The notes under the pieces are model-generated. The model made no database searches, was not told the origin of the DNA, and saw only the letters and a program-made list of their open reading frames with translations. From Podarcis erhardii (lineage: Eukaryota), in assembly GCA_964252035.1 (NCBI GenBank), contig OZ176200.1: a stretch of DNA of 64,000 nucleotides; one strand, 5' to 3'. Numbering within the stretch: position 1 is the first letter of the stretch; each line of letters opens with the position of its first letter. The translations under genes and the position numbers were made by a program. Of the stretch, positions 479 through 61,641 are shown in pieces.

Positions 479-46323
<45,845 letters not shown>

Positions 46324-53713: not shown

Positions 53714-56700
53714 CTAGAAGAAAAACCAACAAGGAATGAGTGAGGCAGCAATAAGGCAAGGGGTTTGCTGGGTGGGCAGGCTGCAACGGTGGCCCCCCCT
53801 CACTCCCCAATCACAGTAGCTCCATTTTTGTTGGCTGAACAGCAGCTATGCTGTTTCCCTTTAAAACAGCAAGGAGGGAAGGAGGCTCCCAGAGGCTGTT
53901 CAGCTTGAGAATTGCAAAGTTCTTGGTCACTTTGGTGAGGACCCTTATTAAAACACCCTAGAGGTGGAGGTTTGTCCTGGTGGAAACCTTTCGTATTCAG
54001 ATATATCCAAGCCAGAAAGATCCCTCCCTGTTCACCTCTGCAATCCCCTCTGGGGCCTCCATCAATTCCATCTCAGAGATATACAGTAGCTGGATGGGGC
54101 ACCTGGGGCTTCTCTAACAGAGGGAGAAGCAATGGAATTAATTGAATTAAGCTAAATCAGGATGGAAAACCTTTCTCGGCTCAAGGGCCAGAAACGACTC
54201 CTACCTTTGCACTGTAAACTACATTTCAGAGGTTGTTATAATCCCCCCTGCCCTCTCTAGCCAGGCAAGAAAAGAGGCATTACCACACTTCAAGGGCACA
54301 ATCCGTCAGGAAAGAGCACCTGAGGAAGGTGTGGATCAGGCCTGGATAAGGGCTGCGACCAGGGGAAGGAGGAAGGTGTGTGTGGCTAGGACAGAGAGCT
54401 CTGAGGAGACTGGATACACTGGGGCACGAGTTCCCCCAGCACTGAGAAAAAGGCAGAGTTCAGCAGTGAGTGCAGCCCAATGCAGGAACAGGCTGGAGAG
54501 ACGGAGCCCCCTTCCTTCAGTTCAGACCATTTCAACTTTCTCCTACATACCAGGAAAGAGAGTTTTCTCCCCAGAACGTCTCTTTGTATCTCCAGAATCT
54601 ACAGATCTGCAAAACAGCTCGCTTTGAATGTTTACAAATTGTGCTTTTTCCCAGTTTGGGGGTTGGACAGTGCTCACCAAACACAACTGCCCCAGGGAAA
54701 GAAACAGGAGCATGGAAAGCTGTCTTGAGGATGCTGGGAGGTCTGAAAAACAGGCCACCCACTTGGGCTTTTGCCGTTAAAGTAGCACAGGTTCGTGGTT
54801 TTGAGCAGCCACAAAAATGTGGCGTGTGCACTGCTTCTTGTGTCCTCCCTGCCCAGGTGTTATTCCTCTGGCCCAGCAAGTGGTACTTGGCTCCGGCTGT
54901 CAAAGAGTTCTGCTCTAGAATATAAACTCCTCTGGAAACAGAATCCACTACTACTATTGTAATAAGCATATTTCAGTATTTTTTAAAAATGTGGCTCTTA
55001 AAACATTCAATATACTATATTTTACAACTGTTTTATATCTATCTGACACTTTGTGAATCTTTATTTTTGGTGGATGTTGCTGGTGGGGTGTTTTTAATGA
55101 AGGTTGCTACCTCCCACGAGCCCAAGAGGAAAAGACAAGTCATTAATCTAAAACTTTAAAATATAAGTCACAATGAATCTCCTATATTTATGCTCACAGC
55201 TGTGGCTTCTAGGCACTGCTGAAATTCATATAATATGAACAATGAGGTCCTGCCTGTGATAGCACAGTGCCCTCCTGCCAATACATACCCTTGCTTTTCT
55301 TATCTGCCTCCGGCTGGACAGTCAAGGTATTGCCTTTCATCTCCTCCTCCAGCTCAGCAAGCCTCCTATGCGCTGCAGGCTTCTGGCCCTTGATTCGGAG
55401 GCTGTACTGGCGGGCCAGCTGGTAGACCTTGTTCTTCACCTTCTCCGCCAGCTCTGCCTCCGTCAGGTGGGCCAGCTGCATTATCCGGGGGTGCAAGCGG
55501 GGGAGATACCGATCTTGCTCAGAGCCCCCTAGCTCATGGGCCAGCTTCCAGGGCTTCCTAGAAGGCGCAGCCCGCTCCACGGGAGACTTGCTCTCAGGAG
55601 AGGGCACCGCCGACTCCTCTGTGATGGCCCCAAGATCCTCGTCCTCCAGGATGAGAAGCGGCTCGTGGAGGTCAAAGCCGTTCTCCTGGCCATGGAGCCT
55701 CTCCGTGTGCCGCAGAGAGGAGCCCCCGGCCACCTGCCCATTCGCCGTGCCTGGCCGAGTGACACCTTCAGGCCTCCTACTCCAGCCCTCTCCGCTCGGC
55801 TTCTCCATCTCCTCCCAGATTTTAATCATCTCAGCCGGCGGCCTGAACTCCGCTTCCGTGATGGGCAGGGGGCTTCCAGCAGAGGCTGCCTCGGAGCGGG
55901 GGGCCTGTAGCCCAGGCACGGGCCTATTTGACAACACCCAGGCTGCTGTGGGGCCAGCCCCACCACTGGCAGGGCCCCCCGGCCTCTTGTGCTTCAGCCC
56001 CTCCTGCGCAGGCTCTGGCTGGGGAAGGCTGTTGATCCTGAAGACGGAATTCCTCACCACCCCTTTGGGGATGTAGGACAGGCTCTCCCGCCGCCTGACG
56101 CTGAAGCCGGCATCCTGGTGCTCCGCGTAATCGTAGTAGTTCTTGATCTTGTCTAGCAGTAGGCGGTCCTGATGGGAGAGCATGGACTCCTTCCGCTTGC
56201 AGGAGGCATGGTCCGTCTCAAGCAGCCCAGGAGAGGCAGCCCCGCTGCAGGCACTGCTGGGCTCACCCAGGGGCTCTTGCGGCAGGGAGTCTGTGGTGCT
56301 GTTCGTGCGACATCCTGCCTTCTCGCTGCCGTCCAGGCTCAAGACGCTGCTGCTGCGGCTAGCCTGCTTTGGAGTCAGGTGGCCCTTGCCCTCCTCGAGT
56401 GCCAGGCTGCTGCGGCGAGAGAGGCTGCTGGCAAAGCGCTCTGCAATGACGCTGGCCTGATCCAGTACAGAGAAAGGGAGGATGCTTCTGGCCTGGGGTG
56501 CACGTCTGTCCTCCTCCTCTTCCTCCTCTTCTTCTTCCTCCTCCTCGCTACTAAGCGGCTTCAGTTCAGTATGTTCAGTGGGCTCCAGGCTATCTGAACG
56601 CTGTTGATTCAGGGTTCCCCACTGGCCTGCCATGACTGGCTCCAGGTTGCCCATCGACTCGGGGTCTGAAGGACCCTCTTCCAGGTACTCTTCCTTAAGG

Positions 56701-59700
56701 GGAGAAGCTTCTAAGACCATGCTGAGTTCGATGGCTGACCGCGCCTAAGAAATGTGCCCACAGAAAGAGAAGGAAAGTTTTGCACACTTAACGCATAACC
56801 CAAAAAATGGTGGTCTTGCAGATAAACAGTTTAAGGGCTAAGTTAATAGTCACTACTCAAATGCAACCAACTCTTGAACCCAGCAAATATGTTGGCTTCT
56901 AAGGCAGGGAACCCACCAACTACTAAGCTGACTCAATAGCAGACAGAAATATTGCTCATTTTTATGTTGTATCTTCTGGGGACAATGTGGACCATCCATT
57001 GGAAAAGACTGTGGCATAGAATACTCAGTATGGGAACGGAGTCTGGGAAGTGGAATGTCCAGGAGCCTTTGGCTTTGAATCCTATTTTTAGTGTTAAGGG
57101 CCAAGAGTTTCCCTGTCTCAAAATTGGCATGAGCAGAAATTCCATTCTCCCCAAGGAATGTAAGAAGCTGCCTGACAGAGCAGACAGTCCTAACCTGGAT
57201 GGACCTGTGATCTCCCTGGTTGAGGTTCTCCAGGGTTTCAGAAGGGACATTCCCAGCCCTCTCTGGAGATGCCAGAGACTGAACCTGGGAGCTCTACCCA
57301 CTGAGCAATAGCACTTCCCCAAACAGCAACTCTGCCAACCACCAACCACTCACCTTTGGGACAGATGAGACATTATCCCCGACCCTGTTTTTCTCACCAC
57401 TGCTGCCTGGCGACTGGTATTGCTTGGGCCCTTCCTGTGCCTTGTGGCTCTTGGCCTGAACCAAAACAAAAATATTAGAGAGTTGAGTACATGCTACTGA
57501 GAAGAAGCCATTTGATGAGCAGCCAAACATCCCTAGCCATTGTTATTTGTCATTCTGAAACACCATATGACTTTACAATGTCCCAGATAGCTAAAATGCA
57601 TCACAAGTGCCCACGCAGGTCCAAGTCCAATATTCTAGCCATTGGACGCAGCAACAAAAACCACCTGATGTCACATCCATCAGCCTTGCAAGCAGCAGGT
57701 GAACGCAAGTGCTGGTGGCTCTGGTTTACTTGCTGCCCTGGCACAGAGGAGCCTTGCAGTTGCTTAAGCCAGTCCCAATTTCATCCAGGAACACAGCTTT
57801 CCCGAGCAGACTCTCTACACGTCTTGCTATGGAGTGCCATAGTTAAAAACTGCAGGCTGACAAACTATCTGGAAGGTGCACAGTTAGTGCTGGATCCAGG
57901 GACGGTCCAATAGCACAGGCAACAGGACTTGGAAGAGGTTCCTGCTTAACGTTAGCTTTGTCTCATTATCAAGCTGCTAACGTGGAAGAACCTTCCTGAC
58001 AAGAGGACAGGGAACGGCAGGAAAAGGACCTCCCACAGCTACAGAGATGGTAAGACCCAAAGAGCCTCTTTTGTTATCAAGCCACAAATCTTGTTAGCCC
58101 CCGTGAAGGACTGCACAAAAGCACCAAGTCAGTCAGTAGTATCACTGAAGGGTTAAAACAGCTGCAAAATAAACCACACGGGAACCTCTGGGGCTGTCCC
58201 ACATCTGATTAATGGGAAGATGGCACAGAAGGAACGGAGGGCAGCCACGAGCCATGCACCAAGCCAGCATGCAGGAGGGAGACGCAGCAGGGGTTGAACA
58301 GGCACCTCACCGTGCTGCCCCAGGAGAAAAGCAAAGCGTTGGCCCGATAGTGCCAGCAGTGGAGGACGGCCATCAAGGAGCTTGCAAAGTCTGCCACCTG
58401 CTCCGTTCCTACCAGCCTCTCCTCCTCTTCCTCTTCCTCCTCCTCTTCGTCTTCTTCCTCCGGCCCCATATCCTTCTCGCTGCCATCGCTTTCAGCCAAT
58501 TCTTCCAGAGATTCCTGGGGAAGGGCCTGCCGATCCTGCTGCTGCTGCGGCAAGCTGTTGGTGGGGAGTGAGGGCTCCCCAAACTCCAAAAGGGCTCCAT
58601 CACTGCCTGCATGCTACGTGAAGTGAGGGCAAGCAGGGGCTTTTAGAAAGGCCCCAGAGCTGGGGCACCAACAGAGACACCGCTTAGGGTGCCCTTTCCT
58701 CAACCTGCGCTCGATCGCTGCCTGCTCAACATGTGAGCAGAAGCACACAGCTTGGAGCTGTGAGAAGCTTACTGGCCACCCTGTGGGAGATGGCAGTGGT
58801 CAGAGGGAAATGTCATTTTGTTATTAAAATGAATAATGGCCCCTGCACCAACATTTACCCCAGAGCAGTTTACCTTTAAGGTGGTGTTTTGGTAAGGGAC
58901 CCAAAGCCCATCGCATGTCACCAAAGACTTTAATTTCCTTAGAAAGGGAAGACCCATCTTAATTTCCCTCATTTATTTTGTCTTCTAGAATTTCTGTCTC
59001 TTACCTTTAGTCCTATTGCCAGATTTGTAGCACAGGAAGAAGAAGGGGGGAAAAAGAGGCCATTAGGAAAAAGGTGGGGTCTTGTTTCCCTGCCCAGGTA
59101 GTCTTCCTCCCTATTTCCCAATCTCCATTTCAGGCACACTCTTACTCTTTATAAGCAGCAGACACAGCAAACATGCTGGCAGAGAGCCATTTTTACATCA
59201 CTTATATCTTATTACAGTCCCTTCCAGCGGCTGTGGGTCCCCTGAGAAGGCAGTGGGTCAACCACAAGGCAACAGGAAGAAGTCACTGCTGAAGGAGTGA
59301 CTGAGTAAAGGAACAATTCAGGCTCACACACTTTGAGCAGGGGTGGGGAAACGTCAACCCTTTGCCAGCCTTGCTCTCTGGGGCTGGTGGGAGTCTAGTC
59401 CAACAACATCTGGAGGGCTCCAGGTTCCCCCATCCCTGCCTTTCAGCATCTAAGGTGCCTTGTTTAGCAATATAGAATTGCCCTGTGCTCACAACTGCTA
59501 GCTGTAATAAATCTGAGATAGGAGTGACCATTGGCATAAGGACGGGCACCTGTCAAATCCCACCCACACTGGTCAAGTAAACCTGGGACAGGGAAATCTG
59601 GTCAGTACAGAGCTTCTTCCACCTAGGCTGGGGGGATGTGGGAAAGGGGGACATCCACTCACCTCTGTTGCTCAGTTGCTTGAGAATCTGTTTTGTTGGT

Positions 59701-61641
59701 TCTGCAATGAAAGAAAAGTTTGCGAGATCAGTTCTTGAAATGCTGGTTCAGAGCCCAGAAATACCAGAAAAGGTGGGGAGAACCCCGGCACCAGCCTCAG
59801 CCCACCACCTCTGCCCCTCCAGAAGGAAACACCTTGAAGCATCTGAGTGAAGTGCAGAACAGCACTAGCCTCCTCTGTGCAGTGCAGAACAAGCCTCTCA
59901 GAGAACAGCATCACCAGTCTTTCACCTGTCAAGGACCACACCTAATCCCTCCATCCCTGTCCAATCACAGGCCTTCAGGGGAGTCCCGGTTAGAACTTCT
60001 CCATGGCTCAGACATATGGCTCTTATCCACAAAGAGCAGTGTGTTCAGTATTGTGGACCCAATTTTATAGAATGCCCTTCCAGTTGAGGTCAGACTGGAC
60101 CCCTCCCTGTTGGACTTCCAGTGCCTACAGATGACTTTTAAAATTATTATTCCAACAGGCGCTTTTGGAAGTTTGATTTTCTAGTTTTAACTAGGTTTTA
60201 CCTTTTCTGTATCCTGTTCCTTGCACACTGCTTAAAGACTATTGTAGTTAAGCGGTATATAAATTGTTTAAATTTAAATAAATAAATCTGTGCTTGCAAG
60301 CCACCAAGACTAAATGAACTAGGAGGCCAAATAAACCAGCAGATTTTAAAAAAGTGAGCCCTGTCTCTCACCCAGTCTTCTACAGAAGGGGCTGTGTATA
60401 CTCCAGCAGCAAATAAAAATAAAAATCCAGAATCTGCTGCCCAGAATCAGACACCTCCCCCCTGCAAACTCGGCAGTTTCTTATTATGCAGAATTTATTC
60501 CACTTTGACAATCCAAGTTGGACTGCAAATAAGATGAAAGGAGGCCAAAAGCCCAGGCAGGAAACAGGGTGTCCCATTTTCCAGGTGCCTGAAGCCCTGT
60601 TCGCCCTTCTTAGGCTTCTATGATTTCAAGAGACATTTCCCACATCTTTTCAGAAGCCACAAGAACTTCACATTTACTGTGTCTGGTGCTATTGCATTTC
60701 AAATGGGGAACTTCGGGGTCAGGGGCCCAAATGCAGCCCTCTAGGTCTATCTGAACCTCCAGTCTCTCTCCAGGCCTCATCTTTCAACAGTCTTGCTTTG
60801 ACCCTCCCTTGAGTGTTTTTGCCTGGCTGGAATGTGTCCTTGAACCATGCTAATGCCCCTTACTTGCCTGGAGTGTGTGTCAAAACTGGCCTACTCTACA
60901 GATGTAACCTTCAGCCATTGCTCCACCCACTTTTGCCTCTGGCCCTGCCCACCAATGACATGCGGCCCCTGAAAGATTGTCCAAAAGTGAATGCAGCCCC
61001 TGAGCTAAAAGGGTTTCCCACCCCAGATTTAACATGCACTAATGTAGAATTAATCTAAATAAGCAACTACGAAGAGGGAATGATGTTGGGTAACATATGG
61101 GTGTGATCAGATTTTTGAATATTGAGTTGACTGTATACTGTAATTAGTATTCTTTTGACACATGTGCAAATTAATCGAATTATTGTTCTCCTTGTAGAAC
61201 ATGATTTATTTTCTATGCTGACTTCGCTAAATGAAATTAACTATGTAGGTTCTATAATTAGTAGTAGAGTTGATAAAAGAAAAAGAGAGGAGCAAAAAAT
61301 GGGATTCTCACAATTCTGTGTCACATACCAATTTGTGAACTCATGGAATAAACACAGCCCTGCCTATAGAGCTTAAAAGCCAGCATCATCTATGACGTTC
61401 GCTGGAGACTGAGAGGCATGTTCAGCCAGCATCGTGCCCAGGAGGCAAAGCCCATAAGCTATTCCGCAGTAAGGTTTGACCCAAAGAGCTCCACTTGCTT
61501 GCTCCCAGCCCCACAACACCAGATGGCAGAGCCCCTTCGTGCCACATGCTAAATCAGTGGAGCCCGCACCAGATTTCCTGCGGCCTTTACGCTCGAGTCC
61601 ATCTAGGAGCCTCTCAGCAGTGTTTTTGCCACGGAAAGGCT
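52905..61641 (-). CDS. PLEKHG3: Pleckstrin homology domain-containing family G member 3 (Dbl-family RhoGEF), 3' half; DH-PH exons lie beyond the window end
   Basis: Exons (transcription order) 61641-61570, 59701-59663, 59012-59005, 58613-58311, 57455-57354, 56744-55289, 53713-52905. Motifs VADFASSLMAVLHCWHYRANALLF, SVLDQASVIAERF, DRLLLDKIKNYY, RRRESLSYIPKG, KVYQLARQYSLRIK (actin-binding region), C-terminal KNLREKFQTLNS; synteny with SPTB. Confidence 0.93.
55289..56744 (-). CDS. PLEKHG3: PLEKHG3 large penultimate exon (includes actin-binding motif)
   Basis: tttcttag|GCG CGG...AAG G|gtatgt; 1456 nt; ORF 55209..56720; SVLDQASVIAERF, RRRESLSYIPKG, KVYQLARQYSLRIK. Confidence 0.94.
57158..57320 (-). 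mobile_element. tRNA-derived SINE (Squam3-like), degraded
   Basis: Same head and tail motifs as 18521-18691 (gctcagtgggtagagc...ccaggttca...ggcatctcc...aaaccctggaga). Confidence 0.5.
57354..57455 (-). CDS. PLEKHG3: PLEKHG3 internal exon
   Basis: ttggttcag|GCC AAG...AAG|gtgagt; AKSHKAQEGPKQYQSPGSSGEKNRVGDNVSSVPK; 102 nt, phase 0-0. Confidence 0.8.
58311..58613 (-). CDS. PLEKHG3: PLEKHG3 acidic-tract exon
   Basis: cttcacgtag|CAT GCA GGC...ACG|gtgagg; HAGSDGALLEFGEP...poly-E...VADFASSLMAVLHCWHYRANALLFSWGST; 303 nt. Confidence 0.9.
59005..59012 (-). CDS. PLEKHG3: PLEKHG3 8-nt microexon (GACTAAAG, completes G-L-K)
   Basis: On -: cctaat (branch point) ...ctttttccccccttcttcttcctgtgctac...caatag|GACTAAAG|gtaaga; bridges phase 1 (59663) to phase 0 (58613). 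Confidence 0.72.
59663..59701 (-). CDS. PLEKHG3: PLEKHG3 39-nt exon
   Basis: ttttctttcattgcag|AA CCA...AGA G|gtgagt; (E)PTKQILKQLSNR; resembles mammalian EPTKHLLRQLNEK. Confidence 0.87.
61570..61641 (-). CDS. PLEKHG3: PLEKHG3 72-nt symmetric exon ending GRRKS
   Basis: cctatccttag|AG CCT...TCT G|gtgcgg; (E)PFRGKNTAERLLDGLERKGRRKS; phase 1-1; resembles the mouse ...GLKGRRKS|EPT exon as I recall it. Confidence 0.75.

What the first reader, a model, noticed from the sequence alone, without database searches (positions are those of the whole stretch)
59005..59012. An 8-nt microexon is needed to keep PLEKHG3 in frame
Seen: the exon at 59701-59663 ends in phase 1 and the HAGS exon at 58613 starts in phase 0, so direct joining shifts the frame. 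On the - strand, GACTAAAG has a CCTAAT branch point, a ~30-nt pyrimidine tract, an upstream UGC, an AG acceptor and a strong AAG|GTAAGA donor, giving SNR-GLK-HAGS, like the mammalian GMK-HAGS I recall. Established: microexons of 3-27 nt are often missed by annotation, and UGC near the 3' splice site is the SRRM3/4 enhancer. Inference: being frame-shifting, its skipping would act as an on/off switch (NMD, or a GEF lacking the actin-binding tail).
Basis: partly seen in the sequence, partly recalled or inferred. Interest (0 to 1): 0.7.

Follow-up and report, generated by a model that had tools for sequence, protein, structure and literature searches.

The report
Conserved 8-base exon in lizard PLEKHG3
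The eight bases GACTAAAG are a genuine, very old, tiny coding exon of the lizard PLEKHG3 gene that keeps the protein in frame; gene models of a closely related lizard and of some birds already include it, so it is real but not new.

Summary
On the minus strand, the 39-nt exon 59701-59663 reads (E)PTKQILKQLSNR and leaves one G. The next large exon starts at 58613 in phase 0. ag|GACTAAAG|gtaaga (59012-59005) restores the frame as G-L-K.

The pattern alone proves little, because 59 other AG...GT frame-restoring candidates lie in the same intron. Comparison singles this one out:
- All five Lacerta agilis RefSeq PLEKHG3 isoforms read SNR-GLK-HAGSDGALLEF, and the exon is identical in that genome.
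- In a distant squamate contig the intron is 43% identical, yet AG + exon + GTAAGA is a 16-nt exact island.
- A parrot has ag|GCCTCAAG|gt, with synonymous changes only.
- Paddlefish PLEKHG3 has an 11-nt version and camel PLEKHG2 a 17-nt version at the same place, so the exon predates the paralog split.

Several bird models miss it and are flagged LOW QUALITY.

A second candidate (58780-58773) is not conserved. An in-frame acceptor 7 nt inside the HAGS exon exists, but no fetched model uses it.

The proposed SRRM3/4 control and NMD on/off switch are untested. This is an annotated kind of feature; interest is low to moderate.

The parts
59005..59012 (-). 8-nt coding microexon GACTAAAG. With the G left by the upstream exon it encodes Gly-Leu-Lys.
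   Evidence: Sequence. It is identical in L. agilis at L004:20683-20690 and in a second squamate contig, L003. The parrot has GCCTCAAG, with synonymous changes only. L. agilis residues 515-517 (GLK) are left over between the two flanking tblastn blocks.
58999..59004 (-). 5' splice site gtaaga. With the exon end, AAG|GTAAGA matches 8 of 9 positions of MAG|GTRAGT.
   Evidence: GTAAG is kept in all five PLEKHG3 genomes.
59013..59067 (-). 3' splice region. It holds the candidate branch point CCTAAT (59067-59062), a pyrimidine tract, UGC (59032-59030) and the acceptor AG (59014-59013). There is no other AG for 68 nt upstream.
   Evidence: The 30-nt window over the exon is 26/30 identical to squamate contig L003, against 43% for the whole intron.
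59663..59701 (-). 39-nt PLEKHG3 exon (E)PTKQILKQLSNR that ends in phase 1 with a G left over.
   Evidence: A 39-nt exon sits at the same place in parrot, squamate L003 and camel PLEKHG2. In paddlefish it is 33 nt.
58374..58613 (-). First 240 nt of the HAGS exon (HAGSDGALLEFGEPS...), phase 0.
   Evidence: L. agilis residues 518-597, 92.6% identity.
58606..58608 (-). Alternative in-frame acceptor inside the HAGS exon, catgcag|G. Joining 59663 to 58606 would give SNR-G-SDG without the microexon.
   Evidence: Sequence. It is also present in L003, L. agilis and paddlefish but absent in parrot. None of the proteins fetched uses it.
58773..58780 (-). I rejected it.
   Evidence: In L. agilis the donor is gc, not gt. 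In L003 the aligned stretch reads AGTGAGAA, which gives an in-frame TGA. No ortholog reads GWP.
61570..61641 (-). Upstream 72-nt in-frame cassette exon (E)PFRGKNTAERLLDGLERKGRRKS. Four of the five L. agilis isoforms fetched (X1, X3, X6, X7) carry it; X2 does not.
   Evidence: tblastn of P0279 residues 478-501, 100% identity. Isoform comparison. Sequence.

Best explanation
GACTAAAG (59012-59005, minus strand) is a real coding microexon of PLEKHG3, a Rho-family guanine-nucleotide exchange factor, and is probably included constitutively.

It is spliced between the 39-nt exon (59701-59663) and the HAGS exon (58613 onward). Its 8 nt plus the leftover G encode Gly-Leu-Lys and move the phase from 1 to 0, so the whole C-terminal half of the protein depends on it.

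The 'LK' it supplies is the start of an LK-H[AT][GD]S[DE]G motif shared by PLEKHG3 orthologs and by PLEKHG1/2-like paralogs.

The same exon, always 3n+2 nt long and in every PLEKHG3 or PLEKHG2 locus examined ending in AAG|gt, exists as:
- 8 nt in squamates and birds;
- 11 nt in paddlefish PLEKHG3;
- 17 nt in camel PLEKHG2.

It is therefore older than the PLEKHG2/PLEKHG3 duplication.

Recognition of so short an exon is inferred to rest on three things: a near-consensus donor, a long pyrimidine tract with a distal branch point and a long AG-free zone, and possibly intronic enhancers in the conserved ~45 nt around it.

Shown here: the sequence, its conservation, and agreement with gene models. 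Inferred: actual inclusion in this species' mRNA, and that inclusion is constitutive.
For: - The sequence and phases are as described.
- Lacerta agilis RefSeq isoforms X1, X2, X3, X6 and X7 all read KQLSNR-GLK-HAGSDGALLEFGEPS.
- Mapping X1 on the window leaves exactly G-L-K between the blocks 59705-59661 and 58613-58374.
- In the L. agilis genome the exon and its flanks are identical.
- Against a distant squamate contig (L003), overall intron identity is 43%. The longest exact run in the intron is the 16-nt AGGACTAAAGGTAAGA, and the 30-nt window is 26/30, as good as the two true exon borders.
- The parrot genome has ttgcag|GCCTCAAG|gtaagg between a 39-nt exon and CACGCGGGCAGC. Both differences are at third codon positions.
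- Colius and hoazin proteins read GEQ-GLK-HAGSDGALL.
- Paddlefish has ggacag|CGATTCTCAAG|gtaaga, encoding AILK.
- Camel PLEKHG2 has a 39-nt exon, then ccccag|CTAAGCCTAGACTCAAG|gtgaga (AKPRLK), then HTGSDGEL.
- PLEKHG3 identity rests on the 503-aa exon, which matches Anolis at 67% and Varanus at 66%.
Against: - I have no RNA evidence from this species.
- The RefSeq and GenBank proteins are predictions, and I could not see how far RNA supports them.
- An in-frame acceptor 7 nt inside the HAGS exon could let some transcripts skip the microexon without a frameshift.
- Constitutive inclusion is inferred only from the absence of skipping models.
Confidence: 0.9

Rival explanations
1. There is no microexon. 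The 39-nt exon is spliced straight to an acceptor 7 nt inside the HAGS exon (catgcag|GCAGTGAT, first base 58606), which gives SNR-G-SDGALL in frame.
For: An AG at 58608-58607 shares the same pyrimidine tract, and the join is in frame. The same CATGCAG or CACGCAG is present in L003, L. agilis and paddlefish.
Against: - The His-Ala codons upstream of that AG are conserved, with only synonymous changes: CAT GCA in lizard, CAC GCG in parrot, CAC GCA in paddlefish.
- The parrot has no AG there.
- Every lizard model and every well-formed bird model reads GLK-HAGS.
- This reading does not explain the 16-nt conserved island at the microexon.
- The GCAG is a by-product of Ala (GCA) followed by a G-starting codon.
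Confidence: 0.03
2. The bridging exon is the other 8-nt candidate GGTGGCCA (58780-58773, giving GWP), or the two are mutually exclusive.
For: In this window it has a good pyrimidine tract, an AG acceptor and a gtaagc donor, and it restores the frame.
Against: - In L. agilis the donor reads gc.
- In L003 the aligned sequence has an in-frame TGA, and the literal GGTGGCCA copy has neither AG nor GT next to it.
- No ortholog reads GWP.
- It is one of 59 chance candidates.
Confidence: 0.02
3. The microexon is real but regulated. Tissue-specific inclusion, for example driven by SRRM3/4 through the upstream UGC, would turn full-length PLEKHG3 on. Skipping would give a stop 4 codons into the HAGS exon, and so NMD or a GEF without its C-terminal half.
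For: - UGC lies at -15 to -26 in all five PLEKHG3 genomes, with a long AG-free zone (56-68 nt) and a distal branch point.
- The conserved intronic flanks exceed what the splice sites alone need.
- Skipping does create an early stop.
- The actin-binding domain cited in PMC13703789 would lie downstream of the exon. Its position is from my memory of Nguyen et al. 2016, not from a tool.
Against: - No model that skips the exon is among the 5 L. agilis isoforms or the bird models.
- From my own knowledge, PLEKHG3 acts in non-neural cells. The papers here show only tagged GFP-PLEKHG3 in HeLa cells and a cardiac context (title and abstract only).
- Camel PLEKHG2 has the exon but no UGC in the ~50 nt shown upstream.
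- UGC in a 20-nt window is expected by chance in about a quarter of cases.
- From my knowledge of Irimia et al. 2014, known SRRM4-dependent neural microexons mostly preserve the frame.
Confidence: 0.15

Closest known systems
PLEKHG3 gene models of Lacerta agilis (RefSeq XP_033015402.1, XP_033015403.1, XP_033015404.1, XP_033015426.1, XP_033015432.1)
   Same: The protein junction KQLSNR-GLK-HAGSDGALLEFGEPS is identical. The 8-nt exon, its acceptor region and its donor are identical in the genome (L004:20683-20690). The flanking exons are the same.
   Different: It is a different species. Introns differ by scattered substitutions (estimated by eye) and the exons mapped are 92.6-100% identical at protein level. 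I could not look up whether the window's own genome annotation includes the exon.
Bird PLEKHG3 (Pezoporus flaviventris GenBank model; Colius striatus and Opisthocomus hoazin RefSeq models)
   Same: A 39-nt phase-1 exon is followed by an 8-nt exon encoding G-L-K and then HAGSDGALL. The donor is AAG|gtaag.
   Different: The exon sequence is GCCTCAAG, with two synonymous changes. The parrot introns are only about 110 nt, against 650 and 391 nt here. The parrot has no in-frame alternative acceptor inside the HAGS exon. Many bird models miss the exon and are flagged LOW QUALITY.
Homologous microexon in paddlefish PLEKHG3 and in camel PLEKHG2
   Same: The position is the same, between a phase-1 exon that follows the RRxSEP motif and a phase-0 exon that begins H-[AT]-[GD]-S. 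The length is 3n+2, and the exon ends in CTCAAG|gt.
   Different: The lengths are 11 nt (AILK) and 17 nt (AKPRLK) instead of 8 nt. The beluga PLEKHG3 protein suggests about 20 nt (ARAAGMK) in mammals, but that is inferred from protein only and was not checked in DNA.
SRRM3/SRRM4 (eMIC)-dependent neural microexons
   Same: The exon is tiny, has UGC shortly upstream of the 3' splice site, has the pyrimidine tract and branch point displaced upstream, and has strongly conserved flanks (the defining features are from my own knowledge).
   Different: It shifts the frame rather than preserving it. It sits in a broadly acting gene. No skipping isoform is known, and neither neural specificity nor SRRM dependence was tested. 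No paper in the library links PLEKHG3 with microexons.

Membership tests
PLEKHG3 ortholog (host gene) | Sequence similarity and collinear exons with annotated PLEKHG3 | tested here: met
   The 503-aa exon hits named PLEKHG3 of Anolis, Varanus, turtles and mammals. L. agilis isoform X1 maps collinearly on the window at 92.6-100% identity.
Coding microexon (exon of 3-27 nt) | Length of 27 nt or less, with canonical AG and GT directly flanking | tested here: met
   8 nt, aatag|GACTAAAG|gtaaga.
Coding microexon (exon of 3-27 nt) | Conserved, together with its splice sites and its coding sense, in other species | tested here: met
   It is identical in two other squamate genomes, differs only synonymously in parrot, and has a length-variant homolog in paddlefish and in camel PLEKHG2.
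Coding microexon (exon of 3-27 nt) | Present in mature mRNA of this organism | not testable with these tools
The only indirect support is the predicted proteins of relatives.
SRRM3/4-dependent neural microexon | UGC motif close upstream of the 3' splice site | tested here: met
   UGC lies at -20 in the window and L. agilis, -17 in L003, -15 and -5 in parrot, and -26 and -20 in paddlefish. This is a weak criterion, expected by chance in about a quarter of cases, and camel PLEKHG2 lacks it.
SRRM3/4-dependent neural microexon | Neural or endocrine-specific inclusion that depends on SRRM3/4 | not testable with these tools
   I had no reads, and no paper links PLEKHG3 to SRRM3/4 or to microexons.
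SRRM3/4-dependent neural microexon | Typically preserves the frame (length a multiple of 3) | tested here: not met
   At 8 nt, skipping gives a stop after 4 codons. This is a typical feature of the class, recalled from my own knowledge, and not a strict one.
Splicing-coupled NMD on/off switch | A naturally occurring skipped isoform with a premature stop | tested here: inconclusive
   None of the 5 L. agilis isoforms or the bird models fetched skips the exon. Annotation pipelines rarely list NMD isoforms, and no reads were available.

The most novel reading that the evidence does not exclude
The 3n+2 microexon kept for more than 400 million years in PLEKHG3 and PLEKHG2 is a regulated gate. The conserved UGC-containing flanks would let a tissue-specific factor (SRRM3/4 or another) decide whether the full-length GEF with its C-terminal half is made, or whether the transcript is destroyed by NMD. 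The in-frame acceptor 7 nt inside the HAGS exon would give a third isoform that lacks the LKHAG part of the conserved LK-HAGS motif.
Probability: 0.12. Interest if true: 0.6.

Novelty: already known. Interest (0 to 1): 0.27.

Why it matters
For this genome it settles the gene structure: without these 8 bases any PLEKHG3 model breaks frame. That failure is visible in several bird models, which are flagged LOW QUALITY or patched with odd junctions.

More generally, it is a clean example of a frame-shifting microexon whose length has drifted only in steps of three (8, 11, 17 and perhaps 20 nt) while its 3' end and its position stayed fixed across PLEKHG2 and PLEKHG3. That makes it a useful test case for microexon-aware annotation.

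It is not a new kind of feature, and its regulatory significance remains unshown.

Tried and rejected
**Reads**
No junction evidence could be obtained.
- Queries were cut at 58374, and the local tblastn used the two pieces on either side.
- P0128/L003 is another species' contig that spans the homologous stretch. I read only L003:1-1120 and aligned only 176-1090.

**Run search**
- The look-up of sequencing runs found no holder recorded as RNA.

**Protein searches**
- The word search with the 503-aa exon confirmed PLEKHG3. Because of the length window it returned only one protein that covers the junction (P0106).
- The word search with the 80-aa HAGS piece gave only a genomic read-through ORF (P0128). 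That still supplied a useful second squamate intron.
- Exact look-ups of P0129 and P0135 failed because they are not the longest isoforms.
- The colugo contig L005 starts too far downstream to hold the junction, so the mammalian PLEKHG3 exon was not checked in DNA.
- Exons were searched by reference only.

**Papers**
- No paper combines PLEKHG3 with microexon or SRRM terms.

**Rejected readings**
- The second 8-nt candidate at 58780-58773.
- Direct joining to the inner acceptor at 58606, as the main route.

Full report
**1. What is in the sequence**

The following all lie on the minus strand.
- The 39-nt exon is ttgcag|AACCAACAAAACAG...CAACAGAG|gtgagt at 59701-59663.
  - Of its three frames, one has a stop.
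  - The frame (E)PTKQILKQLSNR is the one found in PLEKHG3 proteins, and it leaves a single G.
- The next large exon begins cacgtag|CATGCAGGCAGTGAT at 58613 and reads HAGSDGALLEFGEPS... in phase 0.
- Joining the two directly gives GCA TGC AGG CAG TGA, a stop after four codons.
- Between them lies aatag|GACTAAAG|gtaaga at 59012-59005. G+GA CTA AAG gives Gly-Leu-Lys and restores the frame.
- Upstream of it are:
  - CCTAAT at 59067-59062;
  - a tract that is 84% pyrimidine from -60 to -16;
  - UGC at -20 to -18;
  - no AG for 68 nt.

**2. Is the pattern more than chance?**

Taken alone it is not. An enumeration of the 1,049-nt intron finds 59 AG...GT-flanked, stop-free segments of 2-56 nt that would also restore the frame. 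The decision has to come from comparison with other species.

**3. Identity of the gene**

The 503-aa exon (55209-56720) matches proteins named PLEKHG3 in Anolis (67%), Varanus (66%), turtles, mammals and frogs.

A search of the representative library used a bird fragment that spans the junction (P0121:340-480). I used this search because the three word searches could not reach full-length squamate proteins. It returned XP_033015403.1, PLEKHG3 isoform X2 of Lacerta agilis.

It gives these collinear blocks:

| L. agilis residues | Window coordinates |
|---|---|
| 478-501 | 61642-61571 |
| 501-515 | 59705-59661 |
| 518-597 | 58613-58374 |
| later blocks | 57455-57351, 56744-55287 and 53714-52908 |

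Identity across the blocks is 92.6-100%. The window therefore comes from a lacertid close to L. agilis.

**4. Evidence for the microexon**

a. Lizard gene models. All five L. agilis isoforms fetched read KQLSNR-GLK-HAGSDGALLEFGEPS. In one search, exactly the residues G-L-K fall between the two flanking blocks.

b. L. agilis genome. The locus (L004) has aatag|GACTAAAG|gtaagaga at 20683-20690, with identical flanks.

c. A distant squamate. L003 is a genomic contig from Logan run SRR13336339.
- Its HAGS-exon protein is only 69% identical to the window's.
- It carries the 39-nt exon (EPTKQILKQLNNK) and acag|GACTAAAG|gtaaga.
- In the pairwise alignment the intron is 43% identical overall.
- The longest exact run within the intron is the 16-nt AGGACTAAAGGTAAGA.
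- The 30-nt window over the exon scores 26/30. The two accepted exon borders score 28/30 and 26/30.

d. A parrot. The Pezoporus locus (L001) holds a 39-nt exon, then ttgcag|GCCTCAAG|gtaagg, then ggtag|CACGCGGGCAGCGAT. The two differences from the lizard exon are both at third codon positions (GGA/GGC, CTA/CTC). The His-Ala codons at the start of the next exon also differ only synonymously.

e. Other bird proteins. Colius and hoazin read GEQ-GLK-HAGSDGALL.

f. Deeper homologs.
- Paddlefish PLEKHG3 (L006) has a 33-nt exon ending in phase 1, then ggacag|CGATTCTCAAG|gtaaga (11 nt, AILK), then CACGCAGACAGT (HADS).
- Camel PLEKHG2 (L007) has a 39-nt exon, then ccccag|CTAAGCCTAGACTCAAG|gtgaga (17 nt, AKPRLK), then HTGSDGEL.
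- The exon is therefore older than the PLEKHG2/PLEKHG3 split. Its length has changed only in steps of three, and in every locus examined it ends in AAG|gt.
- It contributes the 'LK' of an LK-H[AT][GD]S[DE]G motif that is visible in PLEKHG3 orthologs and in PLEKHG1/2-like proteins.
- A beluga PLEKHG3 isoform reads ...SEK-ARAAGMK-GKGRRE.... That suggests a ~20-nt version in mammals, joined there to a different downstream exon. This was not checked in DNA.

**5. Annotation failures**

Several bird gene models (most of them NCBI predictions) handle the junction badly.
- The flamingo, razorbill and ibis models are flagged LOW QUALITY PROTEIN and read QLG-SK-HAGS.
- The Nicobar pigeon model reads GGQ-Q-HAGS.
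- A tawny owl isoform and P0130 read through intron sequence.

**6. Rivals**

- **Inner acceptor.** An AG at 58608-58607 (catgcag|G) would let 59663 join 58606 in frame, giving SNR-G-SDG.
  - It is also present in L003, L. agilis and paddlefish, but not in parrot.
  - It arises simply from Ala GCA followed by a G.
  - The His-Ala codons in front of it are under coding constraint, and none of the proteins fetched uses it.
  - It may at most be a minor alternative.
- **Second candidate GGTGGCCA.** It has a gc donor in L. agilis and an in-frame stop in the aligned L003 sequence. I reject it.

**7. Regulation**

- All five PLEKHG3 genomes share UGC at -15 to -26, an AG-free zone of 56-68 nt, and GTAAG donors.
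- From my own knowledge, this resembles the architecture described for SRRM3/4-dependent microexons.
- Several points weaken that reading:
  - UGC is a weak signal.
  - Camel PLEKHG2 lacks it in the ~50 nt shown upstream.
  - The exon shifts the frame.
  - No paper links PLEKHG3 to microexons or SRRM factors.
  - No skipping model is among those fetched.
- From my own knowledge, PLEKHG3 with its actin-binding domain is studied in non-neural cells. PMC13703789 uses GFP-PLEKHG3 in HeLa cells and cites that domain. The position of the domain downstream of this exon is from memory.
- I therefore take inclusion to be constitutive or nearly so. I give the on/off-switch idea about 0.12-0.15.

**8. 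Limits**

- No RNA reads were obtained.
- Those places were left aside afterwards, and no letters of them were sent to a search tool.
- I did not search the joined spliced model.
- The proteins of relatives are predictions.

**9. Verdict**

The feature is real and its core interpretation is correct. It is already present in public gene models of a close relative and of birds. The regulatory inference is untested.

Noticed in passing
window 61570-61641 (minus strand): A 72-nt in-frame cassette exon, (E)PFRGKNTAERLLDGLERKGRRKS, repeats the RRxSEP motif just before the 39-nt exon. L. agilis isoforms X1, X3, X6 and X7 carry it and X2 does not. Birds have a similar extra exon (PFQCRDRAETLPDRLHGHTGRRQSE).
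   Followed up: partly
Bird PLEKHG3 proteins P0123, P0124, P0125, P0126, P0127, P0130: Six bird gene models misread the microexon junction. Three are flagged LOW QUALITY PROTEIN and read QLG-SK-HAGS, one reads GGQ-Q-HAGS, and two read through intron. This looks like a systematic annotation failure that the 8-nt exon would fix.
   Followed up: partly
L007:5913-5929 (camel PLEKHG2) and L006:69330-69340 (paddlefish PLEKHG3): Homologous microexons of 17 nt and 11 nt sit at the same position, both ending in CTCAAG|gt. PLEKHG1/2-like proteins also share LK-HAGSEGEL. So the tiny exon and the motif predate the paralog duplication, and the function of the motif is unknown.
   Followed up: partly
window 58606-58608 (minus strand): An in-frame AG acceptor lies 7 nt inside the HAGS exon. 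Together with microexon skipping it would remove just five residues (LKHAG) instead of shifting the frame. It is present in squamates and paddlefish and absent in parrot.
   Followed up: partly
They lie in the most conserved part of the HAGS exon. I left them aside, so the 3' end of that exon was not examined.
   Followed up: no
P0135 (beluga PLEKHG3 isoform X10) and fish PLEKHG3 proteins P0141, P0144, P0146, P0151: In these proteins the ...[LM]K end is followed by a different exon (GKGRRE..., DEEIG..., AEDGS...) instead of HAGS. This suggests that the HAGS exon itself is alternative or lost in some lineages, while the microexon is kept.
   Followed up: no
A spectrin-like gene also lies next to PLEKHG3 in the parrot and colugo loci, which is consistent with conserved synteny.
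   Followed up: no
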